DNA of 64,000 nt from Macrostomum lignano. Its lineage: Eukaryota. Position 1 is the first letter of the stretch, and the number at the start of each line of letters is the position of its first letter. The DNA is taken from positions 62,001-126,000 of the forward strand of contig NIVC01002125.1 of NCBI GenBank assembly GCA_002269645.1, given 5' to 3'. Below, piece after piece: positions 5,201 to 51,461 of this stretch. The notes beneath the pieces are model-generated. The model saw only the letters and a list, made by a program, of their open reading frames with translations, ran no database searches and was not told the DNA's origin. Made by a program: the position numbers and the translations under genes.

Positions 5201-7796
5201 AACTATAAAAATATATCAGCTGGTCTCAAGTAGGAACCCCACCTGACGCATAGCACAAATTTCACTTGATAAACTTTTCAATAAACTTTTCCTCTCGAAA
5301 TATTCAAGGGACCAAACATCGGCTTTAGAACAAGTGATTTCTTTCTCGAGCACGCAAGCCTCACGACCTCCCACCGTCACGCCGAGTCCCCCGCTGCTCG
5401 AGCATCCGCCGGAGTGACTCAAGCCTGGCTTGAGCAGCAGCACCGGAGCACAGTCTCCAGTCACCGGCCGCAACGTCTGCCTCCACCGGCACCACGTAGT
5501 ACTTGCTTGAGCCCTTCTCCACCGCGAACTCGCGAGACAGATCCTCCGGCTGCAGCTGGCAGCCGAGCTTTTGCAGCCGGAGCACCTTCTCAACGCTGAG
5601 CCCTTCGAAGGCTACAGTCGAGTCGACGTCCAGAAAAGCCAGACCATCGCCGCAGTCCTTCTCCAGCAGCAGCAGGTCCTCGCCGCAGACACGGAAGAAG
5701 TGCACGCACAGGTGCAGGCGCCGAACAGATTTTGCGCAGATCAGCTCAGCCTGTCTGGAGGCGTAGCGACGACGAACTGGATCGAACCACAGGAACCGAA
5801 TGACATTAGACTGCTGTTGGGCTTCTTGACTGCGAACCTCTGGGCCTGGGTCCTTCCTATTAAATGATCCAATGGAAGGTTTGGTGTAGCTTTTTATATT
5901 ACCATTTTCAAAGCAGGTTTTTTTGAACTGTGCTTTGAAAACTGCTTGGGTTTGATTCCAGTCAATACACGGTGTATCATGAGTAGAACCGCATGTCCTG
6001 ATGAGAAAGAAACCACCAGTGATATACAAGGCGGAGGATAATTCAACCCACGAGTCAAGACTGATAAATAGTCGTACCTTAAAAAAGATTTCTGTACTCT
6101 ATAAAAACTGAAGATTGCAGCTAATGAGCTTTAAACATAAATACAGTTCGATTTATCAACTAGATTTCAATAGGGAGCCCTGTTAATTGCATGTGACCGA
6201 TGCGGTTAGCCATTCTGAAAAGTTGATGTATTCTGCAACTGAGCTAGTTTCAAATAAACCATGAACAATTGTATGAACTGTCACTGTCATGGCACAGCAC
6301 GCGGCTACAGCTAGAAGGAGAATTAATTACAAGATGGCTGTTGGGCTATTTTGAAACTTCTTTGAACTGCATGCGCTACAAACTCTTCTTAAAAAAGATG
6401 AACTCTAAATTTTCCATGTATAATTTTAAAAATACCTAGCTAAAGCCGTCTTCTTCTTCTGCTGCTGTTGTTGCTGCTGCTCCTGCTGCTGCTGCTGCTT
6501 CTGTGTGGCGTTCCGACTAGCCAGCTGAGCATTAGCCTGCCTCATTGGCAGCGACTTCACCGTCTCCGAAGTTGTCGCCGCGTCGTCCATCTGGCAGGCA
6601 TCCGCGGCGGCGGATTCTCCGTGGCATCGACAGACACAGCAGGGCGGAGTACCGGTTTCCACCGGCTTCGTTGGAGGCGGCTGCTGCGTAAGCGAGTCCC
6701 CGCGGTTGCTGCTGTTGCAGGGGACTTGACGACGTCGTCTGCCTCCGGTGTTGGTCGCGGTGTCGGCGGCAGGTCCGGTCGCCACTTCGCTGCCGGACAG
6801 CAGAGTTGCCAAGCCGGCCAGCTGCTGGATTGTGCTGTCCAACCGGTCCTTGAACTCCTTCAGGCTCTCCTCATTCTGTTCAGTGGTCAACTGAGTCCTG
6901 GTGGGCTCCCTCGAGCTGCTCATTGAGGTGTTCGTGGAGCTGGATTGCTGGCCATAGCTCATGGCCGACTTCACTTGCCGGTCTTTTTTCGTAGTGCCAG
7001 CTGTCTTGTGCATCCTTGGTTTCCTACAAAAAACCGCCAAAATAAAGTTCAGATAGCCGCGCCTTTAAGTTTTATAGAGTTATTTCGTTAGTGTGTGACA
7101 CTTCTAAAGATCTGGCTATGCAGTTTGGTGCATAGATATAAGGCAGTGACTACAATGAATGCCGCGCAAAAAATTTCTGGGTAATTTCAAAGTTTAAATG
7201 GCATCAAAAACTGACATAAAAACTATTATAAGACATTTAGATTTAGACAGATTGATTGAAACTCCCGATTTAGGGCGTATTCTAAGCGGCACTCTTTAGG
7301 AAGTGGCTGAGTAGTTAGCTTATATGGTACTTGCTTATGCGCACTTAAAAGAGGATTGAAAGTAGTTGCCTAGTAGAATCACGGGATTTCAGAGAATATG
7401 GATCAAGAACTTTCAATCATTAACAGAGACAATCTCATGAGATTCCTCTCTTTGTTTGATGCCACACCTTTGATATTGAAATCAGGCTAGTAGTTAACCC
7501 TAAAACCTCGCTCTGTTTTCTTTAGGCTATCCAGAAGTGGCAAACCAATTTCGCGCTCACTGTTTGACTTTTGTTGACCTGCTGACGACGACAGACTCGG
7601 CGCTTGAAAAAATCGGCGTCCGACAAGTCGGCGTTCGTCGGCGCATTTTGGAGGCCGTGCGGCAGCTGCACAGGCGGCCCTGGCGGGATTCCAGCATGCC
7701 GCAGCTGGCTACTGGGAGACCGCCTGCCGCTGCTGACTATCTGGCGATACTGGCCAATCTGCACAGGTCTGTGTCTGTCTGCTTGTCTGTCTGCCC

Positions 7797-7828
<32 letters not shown>

Positions 7829-8462
7829 GCCCGTCTGTCTGCCTGTCTGTCTGTCTGTCAGAGTGTATGTCTGTCTGCCCGTCTGTCTGTCTGCCTGTCT
7901 GTCTGTCTGTCAGAGTGTATGTCTGTCTGCCCGTCTGTCTGTCTGCCTGTCTGTTTGCCCGCCTGTCTGCCCGTCTGTCTGTCTGTCTTTCTGTCTGTCT
8001 GCCCATCTGTCTGTCTGTCTGTCTGTCACAGCCCACCAACCAACCCAATCGCTGCCCGCCACCCCATTTAGGCACCTGGAGTTCATGAATGCCACGCTAA
8101 AATACCTGACCGACCACGCTGAAGCCGCGGCTGCTGACGCTGCCGCTGATGCCGCCGCGGCCAAAGCCTCTGTAGCTTCGGCTGGACAACCATCGGCAGC
8201 AGCCGCCGCCACCGCGGCTGTTGAGGCTGCGAGCTCCGGCGGCCCAGCCGACGGCCTTCGCAATCAGCGCGTGCTGGCCCGGGCCCGAAACTCCTGCCGG
8301 CTGGCCGCTGGCGAGTGCCGCCGACTGCTTGGCCGCCTGGAGACCGGCTTAGCAGCGCTGCAGCGCCTGCAGCCTGTTGAACGGCCAGACCGTCTGCCAG
8401 CGATCGGCGAGGCGGGCAGTAATAAATCTGCCAAGTGGAATTTTGCGGCTATCGGTGTCTGA
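2225..8462 (+). CDS. ASZ1: Ankyrin repeat, SAM and coiled-coil/bZIP-like protein (ASZ1/GASZ-like); exons 2225-2832, 2938-3353, 7526-7766, 8072-8462
   Basis: Acidic N-terminus, ankyrin repeats (GWTPLMLAAERCNIEMVAALIDKGA, GTALHLAARFNYPRVVARLL, GRTPLMEAAARGNLRSVEALL) and a SAM domain formed across intron 2 (LDDLSSFFYGIGYPEVANQF...LEKIGVRQVGVRRRILEAVRQLH), followed by a helical region. All junctions are GT-AG and phase-consistent (2,1,2). A hydrophobic tail continues in frame past TGA 8460-8462. Confidence 0.8.
3470..3665. repeat. 30-bp minisatellite (CGTCACCCTCTCCTAATGTCACTGTCATGA) in ASZ1 intron 2
   Basis: About 6 near-identical units; explains ORF 3419..3715. Confidence 0.9.
4300..4721 (-). 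other. GC-rich coding-like segment; possible degenerate copy or extra exon of the nested gene
   Basis: The minus strand gives RLERDKHSDG...VLQPEDL...(TAG)ATSK and, in another frame, QLAQLIIRAKSYR. These echo LEKDCGDG, LQPEDL, KGSSK and QAELICAKSVRR of the nested gene. Interrupted by stops. Confidence 0.3.
5361..6962 (-). CDS. Nested two-exon gene (exons 6962-6436, 5856-5361; ~340 aa): low-complexity/polyQ N-half plus possible ubiquitin-like domain
   Basis: Donor AG|gtattt at 6436/6435 and acceptor tttaatag|G at 5857/5856 are both phase 2 and join ORFs 6426..7040 and 5361..6029. SVRRLHLC...EDLLLLE...FLDVDSTVAFEGLSVEKVLRL resembles a beta-grasp pattern (inference). An alternative ATG lies at 7013. 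Confidence 0.6.
7768..8030. repeat. (CTGT)n-type microsatellite filling ASZ1 intron 3
   Basis: Degenerate CTGT/CCGT/CTGC tetramers directly after the donor at 7767. Confidence 0.95.
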
Positions 8463-8933
8463 GCCGCTGTGTGCGCCGCTGCGACTGTTGCTGGCTTCTT
8501 AGTGGCTGCGAAGCGGCGCTGATCGTTGGAGTTTTGGTTGGACTGATCGAAGAATTTGTGTACGAAATTGAAGCTACTTTTAAGCTTAGCGATAGTATAA
8601 AGTTAGTTTAGTAATGCATGTTTGTTTGCTACTATGGTTACTCGTGTAATAACTGACTTAACTGGGCTCTTATTCATATTAGTCCTCATTAAACTAATAA
8701 AGTCTAGTATAATAACCCTTTCAATGCATGCATTTGTGCTTGTACTCAAAAGCGCAGTTCCGGTGTTTTTTATTTATTAAAAGCCATTTGTTTTTTCTGT
8801 GTGCGCTATTTGTTTTTTTCTAATTTCTTGAGTTTGAATGAAAATATAAAAATACTGCTGCAAAGTGCTTCAAGTTTGTAATGTACTCGTGACGTCTCTA
8901 ATTTAACTCAATATGACTTCAGTTTAAGGCAAG

Positions 8934-10908
8934 ATTTAGTTCCTGTTTCAGACAGGATTTAGGTACTGTTTCAGACAGGATTTAGGTACTGTTTCAGACA
9001 GGATTTAGGTACTGTTTCAGACAGGATTTAGGTACTGTTTCAGACAGGATTTAGTTCCTGTTTCAGACAGGATTTAGGTACTGTTTCAGACAGGATTTAG
9101 TTCCTGTTTCAGACAGGATTTAGGTACTGTTTCAGACAGGATTTAGGTACTGTTTCAGACAGGATTTAGGTACTGTTTCAGACAGGATTTAGGTACTGTT
9201 TCAGACAGGATTTAGTTCCTGTTTCAGACAGGATTTAGGTACTGTTTCAGACAGGATTTAGTTCCTGTTTCAGACAGGATTTAGGTACTGTTTCAGACAG
9301 GATTTAGGTACTGTTTCAGACAGGATTTAGGTACTGTTTCAGACAGGATTTAGGTACTGTTTCAGACAGGATTTAGGTACTGTTTCAGACAGGATTTAGG
9401 TACTGTTTCAGACAGGATTTAGGTCCTGTTTCAGACAGGATTTAGGTACTGTTTCAGACAGGATTTAGGTACTGTTTCAGACAGGATTTAGGTACTGTTT
9501 CAGACAGGATTTAGGTACTGTTTCAGACAGGATTTAGGTACTGTTTCAGACAGGATTTAGGTACTGTTTCAGACAGGATTTAGGTACTGTTTCAGACAGG
9601 ATTTAGGTACTGTTTCAGACAGGATTTAGGTACTGTTTCAGACAGGATTTAGGTACTGTTTCAGACAGGATTTAGGTACTGTTTCAGACAGGATTTAGGT
9701 ACTGTTTCAGACAGGATTTAGGTACTGTTTCAGACAGGATTTAGGTACTGTTTCAGACAGGATTTAGGTCCTGTTTCAGATAGGATTTAGGTACTGTTTC
9801 AGACAGGATTTAGGTCCTGTTTCAGACAGGATTTAGGTACTGTTTCAGACAGGATTTAGGTACTGTTTCAGACAGGATTTAGGTACTGTTTCAGACAGGA
9901 TTTAGGTACTGTTTCAGACAGGATTTAGGTACTGTTTCAGACAGGATTTAGGTACTGTTTCAGACAGGATTTAGGTACTGTTTCAGACAGGATTTAGGTA
10001 CTGTTTCAGACAGGATTTAGGTACTGTTTCAGACAGGATTTAGGTACTGTTTCAGACAGGATTTAGTTCCTGTTTCAGACAGGATTTAGGTACTGTTTCA
10101 GACAGGATTTAGTTCCTGTTTCAGACAGGATTTAGGTACTGTTTCAGACAGGATTTAGGTACTGTTTCAGACAGGATTTAGGTACTGTTTCAGACAGGAT
10201 TTAGGTACTGTTTCAGACAGGATTTAGGTACTGTTTCAGACAGGATTTAGGTACTGTTTCAGACAGGATTTAGGTCCTGTTTCAGACAGGATTTAGGTAC
10301 TGTTTCAGACAGGATTTAGGTACTGTTTCAGACAGGATTTAGGTACTGTTTCAGACAGGATTTAGGTACTGTTTCAGACAGGATTTAGGTACTGTTTCAG
10401 ACAGGATTTAGGTACTGTTTCAGACAGGATTTAGGTACTGTTTCAGACAGGATTTAGGTACTGTTTCAGACAGGATTTAGGTACTGTTTCAGACAGGATT
10501 TAGGTACTGTTTCAGACAGGATTTAGGTACTGTTTCAGACAGGATTTAGGTACTGTTTCAGACAGGATTTAGGTCCTGTTTCAGATAGGATTTAGGTACT
10601 GTTTCAGACAGGATTTAGGTACTGTTTCAGACAGGATTTAGGTACTGTTTCAGACAGGATTTAGGTACTGTTTCAGACAGGATTTAGGTACTGTTTCAGA
10701 CAGGATTTAGGTACTGTTTCAGACAGGATTTAGGTACTGTTTCAGACAGGATTTAGGTACTGTTTCAGACAGGATTTAGGTACTGTTTCAGACAGGATTT
10801 AGGTACTGTTTCAGACAGGATTTAGGTCCTGTTTCAGATAGGATTTAGGTCCTGTTTCAGACAGGATTTAGGTACTATTTTAGACAGGATTTAGGTACTG
10901 TTTCAGGT
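8934..10908. repeat. 23-bp minisatellite (AGGTACTGTTTCAGACAGGATTT), ~85 copies
   Basis: Highly homogeneous tandem array read directly. Confidence 0.98.
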
Positions 10909-11208
10909 TGATATTCCGGCCGGTTTTATTGATATTTCAACTAACCTTTTTCAACTAACCTAAACTTTACCTAACCTAACCTAAACTATAGTAAAGTTTT
11001 TCATGCAGTTAATTGTTAAGTTCACCTGTACAAAACGACTAATTTTGATTGCTTGCTAATTAATTTTTGAATCGCTAGCATTATATAACTTTGAATTCTT
11101 TATAATTCTTGCTTTCAGGTCGCCACGAACGGCGATTGTCAGCCTAGACTGAAATACCAGCAACAGCCAGCAAGATTTACAGGCAATTCCTTGCTCACTC
11201 CCTCTAAT

Positions 11209-11760
11209 ATGCGCCTAGCCAAGCTTCGATCCCTAGATGAATTTCTCGGCCGCTCGTCGCGTTTCCAGCTGCCGGACCTGCAGCATCAGGAGCGCTGGAG
11301 CAACCGGGTGCAGCAAAACCTGCTGTACTATCAGACTAACTACATGGCCGTGTTCTGCCTCAGCTTCATCATCTTCCTACTGGTTGATCCGGCTAGCGTA
11401 CTATGCGGATGCGGCATTGTCGGGGCCTGTCTGGCGGCCGGACTCTGGCTAGCAAATGGCGGCGCTGAACGGCGCCTACAATTTCGCGACGCCGTCTCGC
11501 GTCGGCCGGCGCTGACCGTCGCGCTTAGCCTGGCCTGCGCTCTGGTGCTGCTCTACTGCCTGCGCCCCGCTGCCATCTTCCTGCTGGCCGCCCTGCTGCC
11601 TCTGTTCGCCTGTCTGGTGCACGCCTCGCTCCGACTGCGCAGCGTGTCCAGCAAGCTGTCGCATAAGCTGCGCGGCCTTCGCTCTCCCGAAGATGTCACC
11701 CCGATGGAATTCGTGCTCGGCTGGCTGACGGCTGTAGAGGCCGAGGGGCTCGATCTGTGA
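11209..11760 (+). CDS. PRA1 family protein (PRAF3/ARL6IP5- or PRAF2-like), single coding exon, 183 aa
   Basis: LRSLDEFL...RFQLPD...RWSNRVQQNLLYYQTNY is the PRA1-family signature, followed by two long hydrophobic hairpins. ATG at 11209; acceptor-like ttgctttcag at 11109-11118. Confidence 0.9.
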   Translation: MRLAKLRSLDEFLGRSSRFQLPDLQHQERWSNRVQQNLLYYQTNYMAVFCLSFIIFLLVDPASVLCGCGIVGACLAAGLWLANGGAERRLQFRDAVSRRPALTVALSLACALVLLYCLRPAAIFLLAALLPLFACLVHASLRLRSVSSKLSHKLRGLRSPEDVTPMEFVLGWLTAVEAEGLDL

Positions 11761-13357
11761 TTTAGTAACCAAGCACTAATTAGATATCGAGGTATTATCA
11801 TAATCAAAACAACATTCAAATTTACTCTCCGCCCCCCCCCTTTTTTGTTTGACGGTTTCGCGTAGTTTCTATAAGGTGGCTCGTAAGGTGGCTAATGCAG
11901 TAATGCAGCAAGACGCAATTTAAACCCGAGATTGGGCTTCAGATCCTGGTGTCCCGTTGAAAACGATACTGAGAAAAGAATCCCTCAGAGCCTCAGAATC
12001 GTTTCAGAGTCGCAGACAACAAAAGGCCTCGAATTGACTCTTAGGCGACTCTTTGACGAATTTTTGGCGACTTGTACCGTGGCATCTCGTCGTTTTAAAG
12101 TCGTCTAGAGTCTCTTCTTTCCTTTTTTACCTGTGTTACCTTCTTGGCCGGGGTGCCGTTGTCATAGGAGTGTCTCGTGGTTAAAACCAATCCAATTAAA
12201 CCAGTTTTAGTGGTTGTATTAGAGACTTCATAGACCCTTACCTAGTTTTTTGTAACCTAACCTTTTCCCATTCGTCAATATGCTGAGTACTTTTTTTCTT
12301 TGTTTAATACTATAAGTATGCAGTCTACACATTAGCACATGTATTTTAGCAGTACATTACACATATATCAAGTGAAAAAATTCTATTGTATGCGGACATT
12401 CTGTACAAAGTTATTATTATTGATTAGTATTTTTGATATTACATTGATAGTTAGCTATTTCTGCACTGTTCGCGGTAAATATGTCAAAATGGTTGTTGTG
12501 TGCGCTAACTTAATTAAGTAATTTCAAAAGAGTTTGAATTGTTTTTAGTAGCCATTGTACGTTGCGCTGAAAGGTATTAGTTAGAAGATTATAATAATGT
12601 TGGCAGTTAGTAACTAGGCGTTGAGAGTATGCCGATGTTCGATAAGTACTTTCTTATATGTAAAGTGAGTGCACTGTGTACTTAAATGCACCTATTAAAG
12701 TATCAGACATTTTCTAGACCGCAAAACTTAAAAGTATCATATTTACTGCTGCTAGCTGAAGTTTTCTATTACTCTGTTTCTAATCAGATTAATTTGCTTG
12801 AAGAGAGCACGATTTTTTCTAATCCAGCTATGATGCTTCATTTGTCTTTGTTTTGTATTGTGCATTCTCTTATTTTATTACATTTGTCTGGATTTATAGT
12901 CATATACAGTTAATTGGCTGGCTTGTTTATCAACTTTTTCATTTATAATTAACATATAATTATATTTGTAAACTCAGCTTTAAGCTCTACAAGACTTAAT
13001 TTCTTTTCATCGGATAATTCACAGTAATTTTTAACTCTTGAAAGAAAGGCGTTTTCGATTCGTTCATTTCGTTAATTTTCTCTCGAACCGTGTGGAAGCT
13101 ATGCACTTTAAAAATGCAGAGAAAAAGGCCTGATTATGAATTGTCTATGGCAGAGGGCAGAGAGCTCGCAGATGCCAGAACGATTTGCCTGCACACCGCT
13201 CAAGCCTTTCCTTTATTCTCTTAGTAACAGCTTGTGGAAATAAGACGCCTGAGTTTCATTGTCAAACAACTTCAATTGCCATCTCTTTAGTAAGCCTTGC
13301 AGCAGCTTTTTTGATCGATTTTGCATCACAACTTGTTGCACAAGTCCAAGCTCGAGC

Positions 13358-15460
13358 ATGACCATGGATAGCGAGCACGGTCGCGAGCTGCAGAAGCAGC
13401 TAGCCGTTCACAAGAAGGTGGTCGTGGATGAGACCGTGGAGCGAATGGAAACAATTAGGCCGCCTATATACTATGACATGCCTCGACCAGACCAATTTCT
13501 GTCCGCTGACGTCAGCCAATCGTTGCGTGATTTGATCAGCTGCCCGGAGGGCTTCTTTGGCGTCGACCATCCAAATACGGCCTGGCTGATTAACCTGCTC
13601 AAGGACACGTCTGAGTGGCGGCTGCAGAAATGCCTAGTATCGCTGCGGACCCGGCCTCTGTTTGACAACACCAAATACTATCAACTGATTGATCGGCCCA
13701 CCTATTATTGGGGCAACTCCGCTAGCATGGAGAAGCCGTTGTTTAAATCCAACTCGATGCTTTATTTAAACGCATTCGGCGTTGCGCTCTATTTGAAAGT
13801 TGAAGTCGGCTGTCACAAGCTGGCGGCGGCCAAGTCGGGCAAGAACTATCTGGTCAGCGCCATTGTACCTCAGTATGCGTCCTTCGTGCACGACTGCGAC
13901 TACGACTTGGTGCGCTTCAATTACGACTTCCTGTGCATGAAGCGGGAGTATTTCGACGGTTTGCACTTTCTGGCCATGACCGGCTGGAATCCGTCCAGCA
14001 CCACGTTGTTCACATACAGACGCAAGTACTACCAGTTCAGTGTGCCGTTCACGGATTGGGTGGACGTTCTGCGCTACCTACTGGAACGGAAACCTTCGTT
14101 GAACGTTGCTAGACTAGTGGACAAGATGTATCGCCTGCAGTACGTCGTGAATCCGGCGTACAACTTTAACATGATGTTTATGAAAGAGATCGGCAAAGTA
14201 ATGATGGAGGCCTTCGAGCTAAAGGAGCTGACGCGTTACAACTTCAACAATCCGACCAAACTTGGTAACTATGCGGGCCGCAAGGTGCTTAAGAACAAGG
14301 AAGTGCCAGTGCCGGACGAGTATGCCACTGTGTTTTCCGACAAAGAAGGTAAACCAAAGAACCCACTGAGGCCCGTTGTGCCCAACATCATGTCTTACGT
14401 GCGTCGGTTGCTATCCTTTCAGTACTACTTTGATGGCAAGCACTTGTTTGCTCTGCCGCAGATCATCCGGGCTATTCTATGCTTCAAGTATCACGATTTT
14501 TTTGTCGTCTCGCAGACGGTAAAAAATTCGTGCGAAACGGACTCGACCGGTGTGCACCGGGTGTACATTGACCCGCTGATCTTTCAGATCAACTACTTTC
14601 TTAATTTGAAGTCGGACGGAATGTACCTGCGCCACAAGCAGTGGTCCAGCCACTCGGCATCCGCTGACACGGATGGCATCACTGAGGAGGAGCGGACCTG
14701 GTTCTATCGATTCGACACTTTCAACTGCCTTAGTCTGCTTGCCGGCTTGCTGCAAAACTGTCTCATCAAGAACGTGTCAGATGTTATTGTTGAGAACGTC
14801 TGTGATCTTATTGTTCACGTGCTGGTAGATTCTGAACTCATCGAGCCCTTCTTTCGCTATTCGTATTACGATACGTACTTTGGTCTGACTAGTGTTATTA
14901 ATTGTGTGCCAAACCTCATGTCCAAAACTGTGCTGCGTCTGTTAAAAAAGGCACCAATCACGCTGGTGAGCAACTTTGAGGTTACTCAGCTAGCCCGCAT
15001 GTTTACCATGAGCTTCTGGAAAATCAGCGCCCAGATTGACTGCGTGACGGTGCCTAAGACCATCGACGAGATGGCCACCTTCCTGCTGTGCAAGCGGCGT
15101 CGAGTCAGCATGAAAGTTGAAGGCCCAGCCACGGGCGAGGCGATGTCGGGCGCCAGCTCCATTGGTGCCGCCGGTGGAATCACCATGTTTGTGCGCAACT
15201 ACGACGACATGACGGAAATCAGCGCCGGTGACGAGAACGCCGAGCAGCCAGCCTCAGAGACCACCAAGAAACAGGACGAGGAGAGGAAGCACGTTTACGA
15301 GTACAAGCACATGGAGATAGACGCCCGCTACAGTTCCGTATTCCCTGTGTACTTCGAGGGTCTTAACAAAGTTCAGGTGAACTTGGACGAAAACAAGATG
15401 TTCGATGATTGCATATTCGAGTCTTACTCGCAGCACATGTTGGCCCATTTGAGGAAATGA
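13358..15460 (+). CDS. Intronless ~700-aa protein of unrecognised family
   Basis: A 2.2-kb uninterrupted ORF (13259..15460) with non-repetitive sequence and GC well above the flanks. First ATGs are 13358 and 13364 (accATGG). AATAAA lies near 15851. No motif recognised. Confidence 0.75.
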   Translation: MTMDSEHGRELQKQLAVHKKVVVDETVERMETIRPPIYYDMPRPDQFLSADVSQSLRDLISCPEGFFGVDHPNTAWLINLLKDTSEWRLQKCLVSLRTRPLFDNTKYYQLIDRPTYYWGNSASMEKPLFKSNSMLYLNAFGVALYLKVEVGCHKLAAAKSGKNYLVSAIVPQYASFVHDCDYDLVRFNYDFLCMKREYFDGLHFLAMTGWNPSSTTLFTYRRKYYQFSVPFTDWVDVLRYLLERKPSLNVARLVDKMYRLQYVVNPAYNFNMMFMKEIGKVMMEAFELKELTRYNFNNPTKLGNYAGRKVLKNKEVPVPDEYATVFSDKEGKPKNPLRPVVPNIMSYVRRLLSFQYYFDGKHLFALPQIIRAILCFKYHDFFVVSQTVKNSCETDSTGVHRVYIDPLIFQINYFLNLKSDGMYLRHKQWSSHSASADTDGITEEERTWFYRFDTFNCLSLLAGLLQNCLIKNVSDVIVENVCDLIVHVLVDSELIEPFFRYSYYDTYFGLTSVINCVPNLMSKTVLRLLKKAPITLVSNFEVTQLARMFTMSFWKISAQIDCVTVPKTIDEMATFLLCKRRRVSMKVEGPATGEAMSGASSIGAAGGITMFVRNYDDMTEISAGDENAEQPASETTKKQDEERKHVYEYKHMEIDARYSSVFPVYFEGLNKVQVNLDENKMFDDCIFESYSQHMLAHLRK

Positions 15461-18400
15461 GGAAGTCATAGCCAGTGAGTATAATCTATCATCTGAAGTA
15501 CGAATTCAGAAGTACAAGGACGACATGTAAGACTATAAATATTGGATGCTTAATGCTGAAAAGTGTTGCAAATGTTTTTTTGTTGTAATATGAGCTTTTT
15601 AGTTTTTTCATCGGCTTTCAGCTCAGCTTCTTAGTGTGATTTTTCATGCATTACGGTAGTTTTGCATTCAAATTTTGCAGTAAATAGTATTTAATCTGAA
15701 AATGCTATCATTTACTGCCTCACATATTTCTTTTACCTAATTTAATTTTGCCAATGCAGAACGTTTTTTGTATTTATAAAGCTTTCTTATACTCGTACGT
15801 AACTTTACAAATGTATTTCTGCATGCATATGGTTATCTGTACTTTTGGTAAATAAAAAGAAATACTAACGGCTATCACTATCAGTATGGGTGGATACAGT
15901 GCTTCCACTTCCACTTTCGCCCAAGCTAGCTACTGAAATTTCAATAGCTCTTTCTTAGTATTTTAATCGAATCGAATCACATACACTGTACGTCTGTAAA
16001 ACCTGCGTGGTAGGAATAAGAAGGTTTATCGATCCAGATTTGATGTGGGTAGATGAGGAGTTTTCGAATTCGCACGTCAGGTACGTACATATCCATTTCT
16101 GTATACTTCAAGTGTCTTGTACTCATACTTATTCTGTACTATCATTAGAAAAAGAGCTGCCGAAAATACTAATAACACTAAAATCTATATTTACATAGCT
16201 AACTTTTTATTTTGAACTTTTTTCTTAGAATTTATAGCTTATTGTTTTACTAAGAAAGCCGAAAACTTTTTTGAGTGCCCAAATTTAAAACAGTATTTGG
16301 GTAGTTCTCAAATTAAGGTCATGATGTTTTGGTACAGAAAAAAAAAGTTTTTGAATAAAGTAATTATTTTGCAAAAACGATTCTTTCGTCAATTTAATTA
16401 AAAAACTGCCGTTAAAACCACAAGAAACCAAATATTTAAGACGAAATCTAGCAATTTGTTATTTTTCGCAACGGAAAATAAAACGACCAAAAATTGTGAA
16501 ATAATGCAAGTTTTCTTTTATTTTTTTATGAATTATATACATCTTTTATTCTATGTTTACTATTTAATAAGTATTATTTCAATAGAAAATGTTATTTTTA
16601 AATCAACATTTTGTTTTTTTCGTATAAATTGCTTGTATTTAAAATTATCGCGTAACAAGAAACACCCGAAATAATTGATATTGTACCACTCAAGAACTTA
16701 ATTATTGTACTTAAACACCGAAATATGAAGCTTAAAATATACAAAACTGGTTTAGCTAAAAATTAGGCTTGCAAAATATGTCTTTTAAAGCATTAAAAGT
16801 TTTTTTGAATTAGAATATATATAGTAAACGAGCTAGGAAGCCATTTCTTTTAAAACCTAAAATGCATGTATCTTTTTTCGAACAGACTTGCGTTTTTTTA
16901 AAAAATAATTCAGCAAGCATTTATATTCTGCAACATAGCTTTAATACTATTTTACTATTTTACTATACTATTTTCTTATGTAATTAGGCTGCATAACTAC
17001 TAAAAGAACAGCTTATAAATTTAAATTAAATACTTTGGTCTTGGTAAGTTAATTAGCCTATTACAGACGTCTGACTCGGCAGCCACATGGATCACTGCAA
17101 TTGCTCTGGCGAACCTCTGTAATCGATTCTGGCCCTGCACTAGCTGTCATGCTCGGTATACAATTCGTCTCATTTGATAAATTACGTCGATGCCTGCAGA
17201 ACTAACCACATCCAAAGGACCACTGCACATCTTAGATTGTGGCACATACAATGATGCTGGTGTTCTGGCAGAGAAACAGGTAAAAGTGCAGCAAATAGCA
17301 TTACATATCCGTCCGAGAGGTGTGCAGTTTACAGTGCTTTAGCCAATTGGGTCAGTAGAATTAAATCGATCACATTAGAATAAAAGTAGATGTTCGCTGT
17401 ACATGTAACAAACCAATAGCAAGACACTATTGGATGTCTTTCCCTTCTACTGATGCTCGTACATCAGCTGGCTGTCTCCACAGGCCACAGCTCATCGCAT
17501 TCTCTGTTAACCGCCGCTTCAGTGCTGTCAGCCGCACTTAACTGTGTCTGGCCTCGGTATATAGAGTTAGTCCCAATGGAAAATCATCATCTAAAACATA
17601 TCTAAAGCGTAATTGTCAATCGAAGAGTAATATAAAATATAGTATGTCTGTTATGGTACTGCCATGACTTATCTGTTAAACACTTCAAAAATTCGTGTGG
17701 CAGCACTCTGTAGAGATTCCATCTTTCTGTACCATATTTAATATTACATTGCCAGCATCAATGGCAATTAAGTTTTTTCTTTTGTCTTTTTTCTTGTTAG
17801 TAGCTATATGCATCCAAAGGTGAAAAGTATCAACTGAATGTTTAAGTTGCTACATGTATATCTTTAATGAATTGCAGAACATATGAGAATGAATTTAATG
17901 TTTCAAAGAAATTAATTTTTGTGCTTCAGACAGCTAATTTCATTGATTATAAATCAGATGCAAAATTGTTTTAATACTATTTCTTGACTAATCAAATCAT
18001 TCAACTTTTTTTATTATTCGTTACTCTTATTTTCTTTTCAGTTTCTACTACCTCTTGTTTTGACTCATTATGTTTACTTGTAACTTACAATACAAATTTT
18101 AAATCAGTTAAAAAAATTGTGTGAAAACAACAAAAAACGACTGTTTTTAAGAGAAAAATAGTCAATTTTATCTACATAAATCAAATTCTGTTTGTTCTGA
18201 CTAACATATTGGGTGATCAATAGCAAAAATTCATCTAAATACGAGCGTACATAAAAAAACATCCAAAAAACCTAACAATGTGCTGAGAAAAATTTTTTTC
18301 ATAACTAGAGACAAAAAAGTGGTACTTTTTCTCATCCCACAGATGAGGACTTTAAATTAAAATAACTTTGGTGCTACTTGCTTTGTTGTTGTCAGCGAAA

Positions 18401-19619
18401 TCTCTCTTTGTTAGGTTAATTTTGTGCTATTGAAAAAAACTTAAAATTGAATTTATTTAACTTTTCTTTTTAATATAGAATGAAACTGCCTTAATTGATA
18501 CTTTAGTGTTAGATATGACTTTCTTTCTTAAAAAAACAGCAGAAAACGTAGCTATTAGCTTATTCTATTAACAGAACAAATTAATTAAAAGTGGATTTTT
18601 TAATCATTCATAATGTTACGTTTCTAGCAAAAATCGAAATAGCAACATCTGCTTTGCAATCGAAAGAGTTAAATGGGTTCTAGGTTGTGCTAACCAAAGT
18701 TATAAATAACATTTATCAATTTTCTTTTTTAATAAGACCACGTGAACAGAATGTAGCTTCTCTAAAGTGGGTATTATAGCTCGTGCGATAATAAAAATAT
18801 ACATCGAAAAATGAAATAGCGCACTCTGATGAGATTAACATCAAAAGTTCAATGTTAAAATAGATTAAGACCCATGAGAGGCATATATTTTTTAAGTCCT
18901 TTTAGAGCTAAAATAAGAAAAGATTCAATATTTCAGGCTGATTTTCAAAAATATTTGTTTCACTGCTTACGACTAAACTTTGAGAACGACCCATTTTTCA
19001 GAAAAAGGTATATACCAAAGTAACAACAAAGTATATAAACAAAGTATATAAACAAAGTATATAACAAAAGGCAACAAAGTATATACTGGCTACTAGCTGT
19101 GTCGTTCGTTATCACTGTCCATTCAATCGGTTTGTGATCAGTTTATCCAACAATCGATTGTCTTTTAAACAACTCAGAAAGATATTCTTAATTTCTGTTG
19201 TATTTTCTGTTATTTATTTATCTATTTCCACTTGTATTCGAGCGGAAATGTTGCGCGCAAGTTTTGGTCTTTTAAATCTTCAGAAGGGACTCTTTCTGGT
19301 AAGCGAAACGTAAGGTGACAGATATAAAAAGATAACCAAGTGACTAGAATTAAATAGTTTTTGTTTTCCAGTTCAGCAATTCTTATGCTTGGTAATTCTT
19401 GACTAGTTAATGAAGACAAAGTCTTTTCGCCCCAGTGAGCTTTGGGGTTGGAATTTTATAATACCTAGTGTTGTATCGATTATTTAAAGACTTTCAAGGC
19501 ATTATTAACGCTGATGCTCCTAATATTTTGCGTCGTGTCATACATAAAGTTAGCCTAATAGATAAAGTAGGGCGAGAGTTGTAAAATGTCTCTAACGTCA
19601 AATGATTTATAGGAAGGGA

Positions 19620-20400
19620 ATTAGGGATGTCGATTCCCCAGGGAATTATCTTATCGGGGACCCCGGTGAAAAGAAAAAATAAGTTAAAACGGCGGATCAC
19701 TTAGATTGTAAGTGGAATTTTTTAAACTTTGATTTAAGCTTTGTACTACATGTTCAAGGCGCAGGGGTAAAAATTTTAAACAATGTTTTTTTAAACTGTA
19801 TTTGACAATGTGGCATCACGAAATCGTGCGCGCACCTTTATCGGAAAAGTGCATTTGTTGGAATGCATGCTAAACAGCTACGCTCGTGAGAGGATAATTA
19901 ATGAATGAGACTGTTTTTATAATCGGAATTTTATTTCTTGCATATATATGTAAATCACCATTTTGTCCTTGTCTAATAGGGAGTATATGTATGACACCCC
20001 CCTATGCGTCAGTGCCTGACGCATGACGCAGCGCTGCGCCTGCGTCAAGCCGTCAACGCAGACCAACACAGCAGTCACTAGTCAGTAAGGCTTCTTTTTC
20101 CTGACGGGTTTCTTTTCTACGTGCAATTTGCTTGATTGAATGACTTATTAGTGAAAAAACAATCAAACGTGTGTTGTGTTTCAAATACATGTAATGCATT
20201 GAAATAAGCAATTATGCGGTAAAAGAGCATAGACAGAGTTTCAATCAGCTTTCTGTGAATCAGTTTCTTATTTTAATGGCAAAAATTAAGTTACAAATGC
20301 ATTTTTTCATATTTTTTCTCCCCAGGGTCCCCGGTTAAATTCCCCGGAGAGTATTCCCCGACAAGCTCCCCGGGGAGCACTCCCGGGGTCAACATCCCTA
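19620..20400. mobile_element. Possible degenerate fold-back/MITE with central hairpin
   Basis: TAGGGATG..GGGGACCCC..GAAAAAA (19622-19679) is mirrored by TTTTTTC..GGGTCCCC..CATCCCTA (20312-20400). Hairpin ATGCGTCAG-tgc-CTGACGCAT sits at 20004-20024. Confidence 0.3.
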
Positions 20401-22554
20401 GAAGGGAAACTACGAGCATAAGTTCTGCAACACATATACAAGTAGCTAAGCATTAATAGACGCACTGCACCGATAAAATGTAATGGAATTGCTCGAATCA
20501 CCGACACCAAGACCCATAAAACTGGAGAAACTGGCAGGATATAGTAGATACATGTAGGTCAGAATCAGAAGTGATCATGGGTGGGTGGGTCAAGTGATCA
20601 TGGGTTCGACCTCGATTGTATTATTCCTTCTTAATCTTATGCAATTAATTGTAAATTAGGTATGAAGTAACAGTAATTATCCTTGACCATGCTAGAGTAA
20701 AGACAAGTCAAAGTCAAGTTAATAAAAATAGACACACAGTGTAACAATAACAATGGTTTTTAGAGCCATTTTTCTTGTCTGTGTTCGTCTTTGTACATAC
20801 ATGTACATTTGGGAAGACTTATCTGGACCCAATCCCTTCTTATTCTACATGTACGCTGTTTTGGGTATGGGGGTTAGAGTTGGGCCGTCTGACACCCCCC
20901 TCCCCCCCCTACCATAGTGGACTGGAGAGAAAGAAGCACATGCTATCGCTATTGGCTAGCCTGTCGTTCTCTTTCTCTTTACCTTCTGTCTTGTGTAGCG
21001 TACACTATCCAATGCACAAGGCCCAACTTTCCACTAAAGGAAGGTTCATATAGTCCGCCCATGGGCTTCCTCTTGCTTTCGCGTACACTCAAGGCCACTC
21101 ACTCTCAACACCAGCCACTAGAGGCTTGTTTTAAATAATCGATCGATAATATTAAATGTACACTTGAAAGCTTGCTTTGGATCCTAGCAGAAGGGGGAGA
21201 AAGTGGCCAAGGCCACCACACCCCACAAGGCAGGCAGGCCGGCCCGAGTGCGATAACGAATGACAAAAAAATAGAAAAGTACAATTTACACATCAACTTT
21301 CAATACAATAAATACAATAATAGGTACGGTATTAATGACAGTGTATTTTCGCACAAAGTAGCTACATTCAAACCACCAGCACGTAAACAGCTAAAATTTC
21401 ACTGTTTATGAAATTTTATAAAATTTAACACATCATTTTAGATATTGAAAACTTTTAAAGGAGGGTATTACTGTTGCATGTGACTATAAAATCGTGGTAG
21501 GTATAGCTGATGATGAAACTGGTGATTGGTATCTAGCTTTTTTGATAACTTAGCCGGTTAGACCCCGAAATAGCTATTGTAATTTGTAACGCTGGAGCCA
21601 AATACAAATACAATGGAGCAATTAGTTTCTCTCAAATCTGTCTCTGCCAGTGCCAGTTTAGTCCATAGTAAGTAACCAAAGTAAAATACCCATTAGTGGT
21701 CCCGTTTCTAATGTTTATAAATATTAAGCTTCAGTTTACTTTTGGCACAGTATGCAATTTTGAAAATTCACCCTAATAACGGTTTGCACCAGCAGGAAAG
21801 CAACTATTTTGTTGTTGGAAATCAGATTAAGCAGTCAAAAGAGTGTATTTCTATGAAAAAAGGTACTTTTTTTCCATTTTTTCAAATATTTAAACAGGTT
21901 TCGCTCTTTCAATAAAAAAATCATCGCAGTACCTTAAAGTACAGTTAGTTTGGAATTAGATGACGGCGTTGAATTGTTTCTTCCATATTCCAAAAATTAT
22001 AATGAGCACTTTTCCTCAAATCAGTTTGAGATCATGATTTTTAGTCTTTCGTCGATAACTTTCTGATTTCAAATGTTTAAGAATTGAAAACTTCCACACT
22101 TGTGTATCTTTGAATTGCGCATCAATTGGTGCATAGTATGTATGCTTAACTATTAGCAGTATAGAAAAAAATGCAAAAAACTGTAAAAGTACATTTTCAA
22201 TTTTTGCATTTTTTGCAACCAAAGTGCCAACTTTTTGATACAATTGAAAAAAACAACCCAATAATGTTATGCATCTTAGTAAGGCGCACCTATAACCCTC
22301 GAACATTTTTAGCTCGAGTTTTAATGTGCATGAGGAAATGCACTTTTGTAAAGACATAATCTTAAGACAAACATTTCAACTGAAGCCTGTTCCTTTTCTC
22401 CGCAGTGAATCCATACAAAACTATACTCGTTAAATAGATCAGATTCTTCTCTTTAAAATGACACCTCACTTGTGAAATTCGCACTTGTAGTTTTGAAGTT
22501 ACAGCAGTTTTTGTGAGATTTTTCTTGTCATTTTTTCGATGCACACGTCTCATA

Positions 22555-22735
22555 TTATTATATTCGTCACAAGCCAGACCACCCAATGCGCTTCGCGCAT
22601 TGGCTGGCTGTTTGTTCCTCATGCTCGGCACTTTGTGCCTCGCGCGTTCGCTCCGCTCACCCCACAGACCCAAGGACACGCGCTTCGCGCGTGTCCTTGG
22701 GTTTGTGGGTTTCGCGGAGCTCACTGGGAACTAGG
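22555..22735. mobile_element. Short GC-rich interspersed-repeat-like segment with GCGCTTCGCGC hairpin motifs
   Basis: CCAATGCGcttCGCGCATTGG-type hairpin and repeated CGCTTCGCG motifs within AT-rich DNA; resembles non-autonomous element ends (inference). Confidence 0.3.
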
Positions 22736-24184
22736 CCTATTTGTTCTCATTCCAGTTACGACTAGATAACTTAATATTTATATTATAATGCCATGGGAAA
22801 CAATACAGAAATAGTAAATTTCTAACAACCCTAAAATATATAAAACAATGCATTTTAACTTAAGCAACAAAAGTTGACAATGTTTTGTTATGCTTTGTTT
22901 TGCTATTTGCATTTTAATTTATTTGCAGTTTTGCACTTGTAAACCAAAAATATAGGCTTAACAAAAAAACAACACCTAACTAGGAGCTAAAAAGTATAAA
23001 GATTTGTATTCTTATATAATAGACAATAATATAGTAATAAGCTATCTAGGACAAGAAAAAGGCTAGGCCCATAAGAAAAGTTTTGACAAAGTATTATAAC
23101 ATTTAGAAAATTCAAAAATGCATTCTAAATTTATAAATATATTGCATAGAATATATTATAGTAATAAAAAATAGTTTTAGGAGTTTTATTTTTAGCTTAA
23201 ATATATATTTTAAATATACTTTATATAATATATGACAAATCAAAAAAATATTAATATAATTATAACAATTGCTTTAGAATAAGAAAGATAAAAGCATTAA
23301 GTAACAAATAACAGCAAGTGTTATTTTGTATAAATTGAATGATATAAAATCTCAATTTAATTTGACATTTCTAAAAAACAAAAAATCTTTTATACTTATA
23401 TAACTTACTCCTATTTTTTTAAATATGATTTTTTGCATTGTAATACTAATACTAATTATATTTTTACCAAAATCTTTTTCCTGAGATACTAATTTAGCTT
23501 GCTAGCCAATTATGCTTTCTGGCAGAAGCCAATGCAAGCCCAAAAATTTACCAAAATTTTGCTTTTCTTTACTAAAAAACTTTAAGAAAACTAACCACCT
23601 TTTGAACTATGATGTGCAATACTTGATCTATTTATATAATAGATCAAATAATCCTAACTTTGCATAACCTCCAATTTAAGCCATCATATAAAATCATAGG
23701 AAATCTGCATCTCTAACTCTGAACTTGCACTTAAAAATATTTAATAAACAATATAGATTTTTATATTGCTTTGGCTAAATAGGCTTTTTTGCCTAAGCCA
23801 CTTAATACTACTACTACTACTACTACTACCACTACTAGTCTAAAGTCTTCAAGTTTACAAGTACAAGTTGTGTACCTTTGAAAACCAGTGATCCTACAAG
23901 TCACCCCAGAAAATTTCTACTAAGCCCTGCAAAATAAAGCCTTACCCTAAAAAGGGGAGCTCTCCAAAAACACTGTTATATGCATGGAATCTTGCTTCTA
24001 CATAATTATCCTATTAACCAACTATAGTAAACAAGTCAGAGTAAATAGATGATTGATCCAAAATATTTCCTAATTGATGGGGATAAACTGGGAGTTCTGC
24101 AAATATGAAATCTGCACCCGAACAAGTGCATAGTCTATGTATACTAAATAACTAATGTTCATTCCCATCTGATAACCCAAACAG

Positions 24185-25669
24185 TCTGGAAGGAGTCGCC
24201 TAGCCAGCAGTCTGGTGATAGTTGAGCATGACAATGCCAAACTGAACCCAGCTACTCTGCATGCGGTTACTGCCGCGGCCAAGCTCTCTGGCAGTGGAGG
24301 CGACGTCACCTGTCTTGTTGCCGGGCACGGATGCTCACCCGTGGCTAAGGCTGCTGCTCAGGTAAGTTAATTCTACAATTCTATCATTCTACACTAATTA
24401 TTATAATATACCCTGGTACCTTTCTGAAGTTCAAAAGTATTTTTTGCGTGGAGCCAGCCTGAGGAAAATAAAATATCTTTCTAAGAAACGTACTTTCCCC
24501 TCCTCCTCCCAGATTTTCTTATATCCCTGAAAATTTCTCACAGTTGTGGAAAATGCCTCCTCCTCCCCCACGGCAGGTCGCCGGAGTCAAACACGTCCTG
24601 CTGGCCGACTCCGATGCATTCAAAGGTTTCCTGCCCGAAGCCCTCGCCCCCCTCATCGTGGCCTGCCAGTCCAAGCTGCAGTTCAGCCACATTGTCAGCT
24701 CGGCCACCGCGCTCGGCAAGTCGCTGCTGCCGCGCGTCGCCGCTAAATTGGACGTCGCCGCCGTCTCCGACGTTATCGACGTCAAATCTGAGGACACCTT
24801 TGTCCGGCCTGTGTACGCTGGCAACGCTCTGCAGACCGTCAAGTCGCTCGACAAGGTCAAGTGCATCACCGTTCGGGGCACCGCCTTTGAAGCTGCCGCA
24901 GAAACTGGCGGCTCGGCCGGCGAGGAGGCCGCGCCCGGTGCCGACGGGGTGACCAACTCCGTCAGCAAGTTTATTGGACAGGTGAGTTACAGCTGACTGA
25001 CTGACTGATTGACTGACTGACTGACTGACTGACTGACTGACTGACTGACTGACTGACTGACTGACTGACTGACCCAACTCACAGCACACAGCGTTATTAA
25101 AGCACTAGAAATTCATTTTACTTTGAAGCCATAGTTTTTCTCTGTGCTTTTTTATATGCTTCATCTTAAAAAACGCACTTTTAAGGCTGCATTCAATTGT
25201 TGGACAACCGGATTAAGGCTGTAAGTATTTTACACCTGACAACCCATCACCCGAGAGCTCTCTCCCTCCCCACCCTCAGGAGCTGAGCAAGAGCGACCGA
25301 CCCGAGCTGTCCAGCGCCAAGGTGGTTGTGTCCGGCGGCCGTGGCCTGAAGTCCGGCGACAACTTCCAGCTGCTGTACGAGCTCGCCGGCAAGATGAACG
25401 CCGCCGTTGGCGCTAGCCGGGCCGCTGTGGACGCCGGCTTCGTGCCGAACGACATGCAGATTGGCCAGACCGGCAAGATCGTCGCCCCGGACCTGTACAT
25501 CGCAGTTGGCATCTCGGGCGCGATCCAGCACCTGGCCGGCATGAAGGACAGCAAAGTGATTGTCGCTATTAACAAAGACCCCGAGGCGCCAATATTTCAG
25601 GTGGCCGACTACGGCTTGGTTGCCGACCTGTTCAAAGCCGTGCCCGAGATGACCAAACTGCTCAACTGA
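24185..25669 (+). CDS. ETFA: Electron transfer flavoprotein alpha subunit; exons 24185-24361, 24577-24981, 25280-25669 (5' exon with start codon not located)
   Basis: [13 protein letters not shown]...[18 protein letters not shown]...[11 protein letters not shown] and the conserved FAD-binding region [11 protein letters not shown]...[49 protein letters not shown]. All junctions are phase 0 GT-AG. Confidence 0.97.
24993..25072. repeat. (CTGA)n microsatellite in an ETFA intron
   Basis: About 20 units read directly. Confidence 0.97.
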
Positions 25670-29545: not shown

Positions 29546-29745
29546 GAGCTGTGCCCTAATTGACAAAGCCCCTTGGTTGTTTCACTGTTAATCTCCGGGT
29601 TGATATTTGTTTATCAGCTTGATAATATGGGCAGTCTATACATGTATTGCTCAAGTATGCAATAGCAGACGTTGCAGAGCAGCTGTGTAAGATCATCTAT
29701 CATATTGGATATGAAAATTGTATTTGCAGAAGGAATTACGAGTTC

Positions 29746-37223: not shown

Positions 37224-51461
<14,238 letters not shown>

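What the first reader, a model, noticed from the sequence alone, without database searches (positions are those of the whole stretch)
13358..15460. Intronless 700-aa orphan ORF with virus-like composition among intron-rich host genes
Seen: 2.1 kb with no intron. The protein is rich in Y/F/V/K/N and lacks the poly-Ala/Gly/Gln tracts of the neighbouring host genes; it looks globular throughout except for a short acidic linker near the C-terminus. It sits in long AT-rich flanks with no recognisable partner genes. I cannot assign a family. Inference: an endogenous viral element (large DNA virus, Polinton-like or reverse-transcribed RNA-virus gene), a horizontal transfer, a retrogene, or a lineage-specific family that is still intact and possibly domesticated.
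Basis: partly seen in the sequence, partly recalled or inferred. Interest (0 to 1): 0.7.

Follow-up and report, generated by a model that had tools for sequence, protein, structure and literature searches.

The report
Flatworm-specific gene, not a virus relic
The 700-codon intronless reading frame is a real, strongly conserved gene of the flatworm Macrostomum lignano. It belongs to a gene family found so far only in Macrostomum-like samples, and nothing points to a viral or foreign origin.

Summary
The ORF is real: window 13358-15460 (+), ATG to stop, 700 aa, no intron. The window is Macrostomum lignano assembly GCA_002269645.1. The gene lies between ordinary host genes (PRA1 upstream, ETF-alpha downstream), in the same order on a second ~97% identical contig.

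No test supports a viral, Polinton-like or horizontally transferred origin. Pfam, PHROGs, PDB sequences, Foldseek against PDB and viral models, an IMG/VR scan and an exhaustive HMMER scan of 1.84 billion proteins gave no viral or foreign relative. There are no terminal repeats or target-site duplications, and third-codon GC (0.69) matches neighbouring host genes.

The 20 relatives fall into about 18 groups. Twelve are M. lignano proteins and the rest come from unnamed sequencing runs. Some paralogs have 1-6 introns.

Selection is strongly purifying. All 16 differences among near-identical genomic copies are synonymous. dN/dS is about 0.07 against the 78% paralog and 0.04 against an ortholog in another run.

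AlphaFold (pTM 0.64) gives a structured N-terminal module, a helical C-terminal region and a conserved acidic tail, with no significant fold match. Most likely it is a non-enzymatic intracellular scaffold, which is inference only.

Verdict: an ordinary lineage-restricted host gene of low to moderate interest.

The parts
13358..15460 (+). Single-exon CDS, 700 aa plus stop; the gene itself
   Evidence: ORF list. An identical 700-aa product is called on two contigs of GCA_002269645.1. The start position agrees with the paralog and the ortholog.
13520..14152 (+). N-terminal family-signature module (aa 55-265): alternating short strands and helix pairs. It is the part shared by all family members.
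   Evidence: Most phmmer hits align to aa ~40-260. AlphaFold pLDDT is mostly 80-93 here. The positions invariant across the 13 N-terminal sequences of A4 are T74, W76, D112, P114, Y145 and D233.
14153..14386 (+). Basic, low-confidence (probably flexible) linker, aa 266-343
   Evidence: pLDDT below 50. Net charge is +6 over aa 301-350. It is nevertheless well conserved with the paralog, 88% aa over aa 301-400.
14387..15094 (+). C-terminal all-helical region, aa 344-579
   Evidence: Helices are predicted with pLDDT 70-92 over aa 345-395 and 443-580. It holds D453, the only residue invariant in all 21 sequences of A3. Weak, non-significant Foldseek hits are mostly alpha-solenoids.
15095..15457 (+). 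Conserved tail, aa 580-700: a basic cluster K579-K586 containing R-R-x-S, a Gly/Ala/Ser stretch, an acidic stretch and a long predicted helix (633-661)
   Evidence: It is the most conserved segment against the paralog (aa 601-700: 90% aa, dN 0.064) and is shared by the four closest clades. pLDDT is low apart from the helices. Net charge is -5 and -3.
15851..15856 (+). First canonical AATAAA after the stop; putative poly(A) signal (inferred)
   Evidence: Read directly from the sequence. On the sister contig the next gene starts 0.85 kb after the stop, so the 3' UTR must be short.
7772..16298 (.). Block colinear at ~97% with the second genomic copy (NIVC01000575.1). It contains PRA1, the gene and its flanks.
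   Evidence: blastn of the window against L004.
11119..11760 (+). Upstream neighbour: PRA1-family gene, single exon (context)
   Evidence: Gene call on L005 shifted to window coordinates. Pfam PRA1 E=1.4e-29.
19248..25460 (+). Downstream neighbour: electron-transfer flavoprotein alpha gene, with introns (context; it runs past the fetched locus)
   Evidence: Gene call with ETF and ETF_alpha Pfam domains. Exon matches to L004.

Best explanation
This is an intact, expressed, single-exon host gene of Macrostomum lignano. It is one member (clade A1) of a multigene family known so far only from M. lignano and a few unnamed sequencing runs.

Shown:
- It is a vertically inherited nuclear gene sitting between PRA1 and ETF-alpha on both duplicated genome copies.
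- It has an old paralog (78% aa, synonymous sites saturated).
- It has an ortholog in another sample.
- It evolves under strong purifying selection.

Inferred mechanism (low confidence, about 0.3): the protein is a non-enzymatic intracellular scaffold or adaptor. It has no signal peptide or membrane segment that I could see. It combines the family's structured N-terminal strand/helix-pair module with an all-helical C-terminal region. A conserved basic R-R-x-S site and an acidic tail with a long helix would serve as a partner-binding or regulated segment.

The confidence given (0.8) is for the identity as a functional, lineage-restricted host gene, not for the scaffold mechanism.
For: Identity and context:
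- The window is 100% identical to NIVC01002125.1. A second copy at ~97% has the same neighbours.

Family:
- An exhaustive phmmer scan of 1.84 billion representatives gave 20 hits, falling into 18 groups at 60% identity or more.
- Twelve groups carry M. lignano accessions. The rest come from runs SRR30276804/815, SRR33002330 and ERR9463028.

Host-type gene structure in the family:
- P0014 has 6 introns, P0022 has 3 and P0010 has 1. P0026 and P0002 have none.

Selection:
- Window copy against sister copy: 5 differences, all synonymous. The flanks show 1-2% substitutions plus indels.
- The three copies of the paralog differ at 5-11 sites, all synonymous.
- That makes 16 of 16 changes synonymous, P about 2e-10 if a quarter of random changes are silent (my arithmetic).
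- dN 0.137 and dS ~2 against the paralog. dN 0.067 and dS 1.69 against ortholog P0045.

Composition:
- GC3 is 0.69 against 0.61-0.74 in neighbouring host exons.

Expression (indirect):
- The GenBank annotation of this assembly was built from RNA-seq-guided transcript assemblies. Transcripts overlapping repeat annotations were removed (PMC5730564), and the gene is in that annotation.

Architecture:
- AlphaFold with a 21-sequence alignment gave pTM 0.64, confident over aa 60-265, 345-395 and 443-580.
Against: - The function is not shown by anything here. No known domain, fold or motif was matched significantly.
- Three acidic residues are invariant or nearly invariant in the 21-sequence alignment (D453 invariant; D112 and D233 in at least 90%). 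They could mark an active or metal-binding site, which would argue against a purely scaffolding role.
- I saw no RNA reads myself. Expression rests on how the public annotation was made.
- The organisms behind the non-lignano runs are unknown, so 'Macrostomum-restricted' is provisional.
- Two word-indexed searches failed to recover even known family members. Those negatives carry no weight.
Confidence: 0.8

Rival explanations
1. The gene is an ancient retrogene. An mRNA of an intron-bearing family member was reverse-transcribed and inserted between PRA1 and ETF-alpha before the A1/A2 duplication. This concerns only the origin of the intronless state and is compatible with the best explanation.
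For: - The CDS has no intron, while paralogs have 1-6.
- Introns of P0014 and P0022 map within a few residues of each other, near query aa 431 and 434. This hints at an intron-bearing ancestor.
- The average M. lignano gene has about 4.9 introns (PMC5730564).
Against: - There is no poly(A) remnant and no flanking direct repeats.
- No intron-bearing parent is closer than 37% identity.
- The paralog P0002, the more distant P0026 and the neighbouring PRA1 gene are also single-exon. Stepwise intron loss, or an ancestrally intron-poor state, fits as well.
- The alignment near aa 431-434 is uncertain.
Confidence: 0.2
2. The N-terminal module is a highly diverged ankyrin-repeat domain, making the protein an ankyrin-type binding scaffold.
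For: - The predicted secondary structure shows recurring short strand plus 7-residue and 9-residue helix pairs (for example 134-157 and 184-207).
- By eye, several segments resemble the ankyrin helix-turn-helix pattern.
- TRP-channel and viral 'ankyrin' models appear among the weak Foldseek hits.
Against: - No Ank-family Pfam hit at E<=10 in any of the 21 members.
- hhalign of the N-terminal profile against the true ankyrin exons of the upstream gene gave probability below 4%.
- The N-terminal profile finds no ankyrin chain in the PDB.
- Self-comparison finds no internal repeat.
- The Foldseek hits have E of 0.4 or more and TM about 0.1.
Confidence: 0.15
3. The gene is an endogenous viral element or a domesticated viral gene from a large DNA virus, a Polinton-like element or an RNA virus.
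For: Only circumstantial: a long intronless ORF, AT-rich flanks and no known domain.
Against: - No viral hit in Pfam or PHROGs, in the 1.84-billion-protein scan, in IMG/VR or in BFVD structures (best E 0.31, TM 0.1).
- No terminal inverted or direct repeats.
- The neighbours are housekeeping genes, in the same order on both genome copies.
- The family has spliceosomal introns in several members.
- GC3 is host-like.
- Paralogs share homology only within the CDS, so there is no shared 'element'.
Confidence: 0.03
4. The gene is a domesticated transposase or integrase-like enzyme. Three acidic residues that are invariant or nearly so (D112, D233, D453) would form a DDD catalytic triad.
For: - D453 is invariant in all 21 sequences. 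D112 and D233 are present in at least 90% of them and are invariant in the 13-sequence N-terminal alignment.
- D112 and D233 each follow a predicted strand, and D453 lies in a helix.
- One database gives a family member the name 'Integrase catalytic domain-containing protein'.
Against: - That name could not be reproduced. There was no rve or DDE Pfam hit at E<=10 in that protein or in any other member.
- Source names across the family are mutually inconsistent: Bromo, MPN, Sm, TPR and Mab-21.
- Foldseek found no RNase-H-like or transposase structure.
- Helices interleave the strands, unlike the RNase-H core.
- There are no element ends.
Confidence: 0.04
5. The gene was acquired by horizontal transfer from a bacterium, fungus or other non-flatworm donor.
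For: None beyond the lack of metazoan homologs.
Against: - No non-flatworm-labelled hit among 1.84 billion representatives.
- Host codon usage.
- A many-membered, intron-bearing family.
Confidence: 0.02

Closest known systems
Taxonomically restricted (flatworm-specific) genes of M. lignano, such as the flatworm-specific reproduction gene reported in PMC5816591
   Same: A protein-coding gene with no recognisable domain, found only in flatworm data, present in several near-identical genomic copies because of the duplicated karyotype of the sequenced line (PMC5730564).
   Different: No sequence relation to that gene was found or claimed. No expression pattern or phenotype is known for this family, and its identifiers did not occur in the supplements searched.
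Ankyrin-repeat / alpha-solenoid scaffold proteins
   Same: Predicted helix-pair periodicity in the N-terminal module and an all-helical C-terminal region. The weak fold hits are mostly solenoids such as importins, Integrator subunits, TPR proteins and TRP ankyrin domains.
   Different: No statistically supported sequence, profile or fold match, and no detectable internal repeat.
Endogenous viral elements / Polinton-like elements
   Same: A long intronless ORF flanked by AT-rich non-coding DNA.
   Different: No viral homolog, no partner viral genes and no terminal repeats. The gene has host synteny, host codon usage and intron-bearing paralogs.
Processed retrogenes
   Same: Intronless while some relatives have introns.
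   Different: No poly(A) tract or target-site duplication and no close intron-bearing parent. Synonymous sites are saturated against the nearest paralog.

Membership tests
Endogenous viral element | Detectable similarity to a viral protein, by sequence or fold | tested here: not met
   Pfam and PHROGs gave 0 hits. The 1.84-billion-protein phmmer scan returned only M. lignano proteins and unnamed runs. IMG/VR gave none. BFVD best E was 0.31 with TM 0.10.
Endogenous viral element | Insertion-like context: element boundaries, viral partner genes, absence from the homologous locus | tested here: not met
   No TIR, LTR or TSD. The neighbours are PRA1 and ETF-alpha. The gene is present at the same locus on both genome copies.
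Polinton/Maverick-like element | Terminal inverted repeats plus polymerase B, integrase, capsid, ATPase and protease genes nearby | tested here: not met
   No inverted repeats bracket the ORF. No such genes are called within +/-10 kb.
Processed retrogene | Intronless copy of an identifiable intron-bearing parent, with a poly(A) remnant and target-site duplication | tested here: inconclusive
   The gene is intronless and intron-bearing paralogs exist. There is no poly(A) tract or TSD, and the nearest intron-bearing relative is only 37% identical. At dS ~2 these hallmarks would have been erased.
Horizontally transferred gene | Closest relatives in a non-animal donor lineage | tested here: not met
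   No such hits.
Lineage-restricted host multigene family | Homologs only within the lineage, in several diverged paralog groups | tested here: met
   20 representatives fall into 18 groups, 12 of them labelled M. lignano. The organisms of three other runs are unknown.
Lineage-restricted host multigene family | Host gene features: spliceosomal introns in members, host codon usage, syntenic chromosomal location | tested here: met
   Introns in P0014, P0022 and P0010. GC3 0.69 against host 0.61-0.74. Same neighbours on both copies.
Lineage-restricted host multigene family | Maintained by purifying selection, i.e. a functional gene and not a decaying copy | tested here: met
   16 of 16 differences among near-identical copies are synonymous. 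dN/dS is about 0.07 against the paralog and about 0.04 against the ortholog.
Ankyrin-repeat proteins | Match to ankyrin repeat profiles, or detectable ~33-residue internal repeats | tested here: not met
   No Ank Pfam hit at E<=10 in 21 members. hhalign against real ankyrin exons gave probability below 4%. The PDB profile search found none. Self-hhalign found no repeat.
Mab-21 / cGAS-like nucleotidyltransferases (a source name of paralog P0004) | Mab-21 profile match and a conserved G[GS]...[DE]x[DE] catalytic motif | tested here: not met
   No Mab-21 hit at E<=10. The D-x-D-like stretch at aa 179-183 of the window protein is not conserved in the other clades.
DDE/DDD transposase-integrase superfamily (a source name of paralog P0037) | RNase-H-like fold or rve/DDE profile match | tested here: not met
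   No profile hit and no RNase-H-like Foldseek hit. Active-site geometry could not be examined.

The most novel reading that the evidence does not exclude
The family may define a protein module with no relative in the present structure or family databases. It could be a new fold, or a domain diverged beyond recognition, that arose and expanded within macrostomid flatworms. A less likely version is that it descends from an unsampled virus or mobile element and was domesticated long before the A1/A2 duplication.
Probability: 0.1. Interest if true: 0.55.

Novelty: new member of a known kind. Interest (0 to 1): 0.22.

Why it matters
It removes a false lead. A long intronless ORF in AT-rich flanks of a repeat-rich flatworm genome is not, on those grounds alone, evidence of a viral insertion.

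On the positive side, it marks an uncharacterised but strongly conserved family. There are at least 12 paralog groups in M. lignano, with dN/dS of 0.04-0.07 for this member. The family has no Pfam model and no structural relative. It could be registered as a new family and examined in a model flatworm that already has good expression resources.

Tried and rejected
1. Nucleotidyltransferase (cGAS/Mab-21) idea. It was prompted by a G...D-x-D-like stretch at aa 160-183 and a source name. I rejected it because the motif is not conserved among clades and there is no Mab-21 profile hit.
2. Ankyrin-repeat idea. Four tests were negative. I keep it only as a weak rival.
3. DDD-transposase idea. There are no profile or fold hits.
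4. Source names of paralogs (Bromo, MPN, Sm, TPR, Integrase, ORF12, Mab-21). They could not be reproduced and are mutually inconsistent. Only Exo70 was reproduced, in a model that is evidently a fusion.
5. AlphaFold with a 2-sequence alignment failed, with pLDDT 30.
6. Two word-indexed homology searches with alignments returned nothing beyond the query and its paralog, or nothing at all. They missed known members, so they are uninformative.
7. Weak PDB sequence hits (eIF2-alpha E 0.03, UBE2O E 0.26, IS608 TnpA E 0.2, uS15m E 0.44) were judged chance matches in charged or low-complexity stretches.
8. Literature and supplement searches found nothing for family gene identifiers or for the run accessions.
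9. A search for shared 5' leaders on the transcript-sized Logan contigs found none.
10. Rfam and tRNA scans of the window found nothing.
Full report
**Observation**

The frame is present as described. It runs from the ATG at 13358 to the stop ending at 15460, 700 aa, with only a mechanical TTG extension upstream. By my arithmetic (61/64)^700 is about 2.5e-15, so a 700-codon open frame is not a chance event. The ORF has GC 0.51 and sits in flanks of GC 0.37 and 0.31. Its longest homopolymer run is 3, it is rich in L, V, S, K, F and Y, and it turns acidic near aa 601-700. It has no Pfam, PHROG or PDB sequence match.

**Where the window comes from**

The protein is identical to a product called on two contigs of the Macrostomum lignano assembly GCA_002269645.1. 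Window 3358-25460 is 100% identical to NIVC01002125.1. NIVC01000575.1 carries a second copy that is colinear at ~97% over window 7772-16298.

Both copies have the same gene order: an ankyrin/SAM gene, a single-exon PRA1 gene 1.6 kb upstream, the ORF, then ETF-alpha. Duplicate contigs are expected, because the sequenced line has extra large chromosomes and 180 Mb of blocks at 95% identity or more (PMC5730564).

**Relatives**

An exhaustive phmmer scan of 1.84 billion cluster representatives returned 20 proteins. With their cluster members they form 18 groups at 60% identity or more.
- Twelve groups carry M. lignano accessions.
- The rest come from Logan assemblies of runs SRR30276804/815, SRR33002330 and ERR9463028, whose organisms I could not identify.

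The closest paralog, P0002, is 78% identical in protein and 76% in DNA. It lies on three contigs at an unrelated locus, and its homology to the window ends at the stop codon and begins about 100 nt inside the CDS. No larger 'element' is therefore shared.

Three further clades are 30-37% identical over their aligned length. Two of them span the whole protein, and the third is known only from truncated models. The more distant groups share mainly the N-terminal ~210 residues, although they can be aligned further by eye.

**Tests of a viral, mobile or foreign origin**

All were negative.
- No viral family or fold match. BFVD best E was 0.31 with TM 0.10, and PDB best E was 0.42.
- No relative in IMG/VR.
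- No non-flatworm hit.
- No inverted or direct repeats bracketing the ORF.
- Third-position GC is 0.69 against 0.61-0.74 in neighbouring host exons.
- Several paralogs have spliceosomal introns: six in P0014, three in P0022 and one in P0010. P0026 and P0002 have none.
- Two intron positions map close together, near query aa 431 and 434. This allows, but does not prove, an intron-bearing ancestor.

**Selection**

- The window copy and its sister copy differ at 5 of 2103 CDS positions, all synonymous. The flanks show 1-2% substitutions plus many indels.
- The three copies of the paralog differ at 5-11 positions, all synonymous.
- In total 16 of 16 changes are silent. That gives P about 2e-10 if one quarter of random changes are silent (my arithmetic).
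- Against the paralog, dN is 0.137 with dS ~2 (saturated), so dN/dS is about 0.07. The tail (aa 601-700) and aa 301-400 are the most constrained segments.
- A 702-aa protein from run SRR30276804 is 88.5% identical to the window protein (621 of 702 aligned positions), closer than P0002 is to it (556 of 703). It has dN 0.067 and dS 1.69.
- That protein is therefore an ortholog in another species, and the A1/A2 duplication is older than that split.

**Expression**

The evidence is indirect. The GenBank annotation of this assembly derives from RNA-seq-guided transcript assemblies, with repeat-overlapping transcripts removed (PMC5730564). The gene is in that annotation as a single-exon CDS. The Logan contigs that carry relatives are transcript-sized, 2.0-2.9 kb. 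I did not see reads.

**Structure and likely mode of action**

AlphaFold failed with two sequences, giving pLDDT 30. With a 21-sequence alignment it gave pTM 0.64. The model has four parts:
- A confident N-terminal module, aa 60-265, of short strands alternating with helix pairs.
- A low-confidence basic linker, aa 266-343.
- A helical region, aa 344-579.
- A low-confidence but highly conserved tail. It carries a basic R-R-x-S cluster at 579-586, a small-residue stretch, an acidic stretch and a long helix at 633-661.

No fold match is significant, and the weak hits are mostly alpha-solenoids. The best-supported reading is a non-enzymatic intracellular scaffold whose tail binds partners or is regulated. 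This is inference, and I put it at about 0.3.

Three rival readings were tested.
- Ankyrin-like. No Ank profile hit, hhalign probability below 4% against true ankyrin exons, no PDB ankyrin hit and no internal repeat.
- Nucleotidyltransferase. The motif is not conserved and there is no Mab-21 hit.
- DDD transposase. D453 is invariant and D112 and D233 are nearly so, but there is no profile or fold support.

The database names of paralogs are mutually inconsistent and could not be reproduced.

**Comparison with known kinds and verdict**

The gene behaves like the many taxonomically restricted genes of flatworms. It fails every testable criterion for an endogenous viral element, a Polinton-like element or a horizontal transfer. 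An ancient retroposition remains possible as the origin of its intronless state, but no hallmark survives.

It is already in GenBank as a hypothetical protein. The family as such has no Pfam model, and I found no paper that mentions it. I rate it a new member of a known kind, lineage-restricted host gene families, with interest about 0.2.

The residual novel possibility is that the family represents an unrecognised fold, or a very old domestication from an unsampled source. I give that about 10%.

Noticed in passing
window 1554-63870, e.g. 8922-10906, 26051-27402, 27938-29556, 33208-34443, 57442-60968, 61331-62717: The window is packed with minisatellite arrays: 34 TRF rows, units of 19-62 bp and up to 140 copies. 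They create extreme GC skew and long spurious ORFs, for example 57404-60973 at 1189 aa.
   Followed up: partly
window 39856-40992 (-): A 378-aa ORF with QRICH1 (E 7e-7) and DUF3504 (E 4e-25) domains. From my own knowledge, not tested here, DUF3504 is associated with Crypton-type tyrosine-recombinase elements and genes derived from them. If anything in this window is mobile-element-related, this is the candidate, not the reported ORF.
   Followed up: no
window 16299-19083 and 19407-22729: Two AT-rich stretches have no counterpart on the ~97% identical sister contig. ETF-alpha therefore starts 0.85 kb after the stop on the sister contig but about 3.8 kb after it here. They have no ORF of 150 aa or more and no clear terminal repeats in the first stretch. 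They are insertion/deletion differences between the duplicated genome copies.
   Followed up: partly
window 11119-11760 (+): The PRA1-family neighbour is also a single-exon CDS (213 aa in a 642-nt gene). Intronless genes are therefore not exceptional in this neighbourhood.
   Followed up: yes
window ~5361-7697 (-): A 406-aa gene with no Pfam domain is annotated on the opposite strand inside the ankyrin/SAM gene. Its two largest ORF pieces (5361-6029 and 6426-7040) had no Pfam hit.
   Followed up: no
L013 (NIVC01002156.1) 3001-5842: Family member P0010 lies on the opposite strand within the span of a large BAR-PH-ArfGAP-ankyrin-SH3 gene, so it appears to be a nested gene.
   Followed up: no
L001-L003, CDS 10001-12106 and flanks: The three copies of paralog P0002 differ by only 0.2-0.5% in the CDS (all silent), but by about 5-7% substitutions in the 2-kb flanks. 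The synonymous rate is lower than the flank divergence. Possible causes are gene conversion or constraint on silent sites.
   Followed up: no
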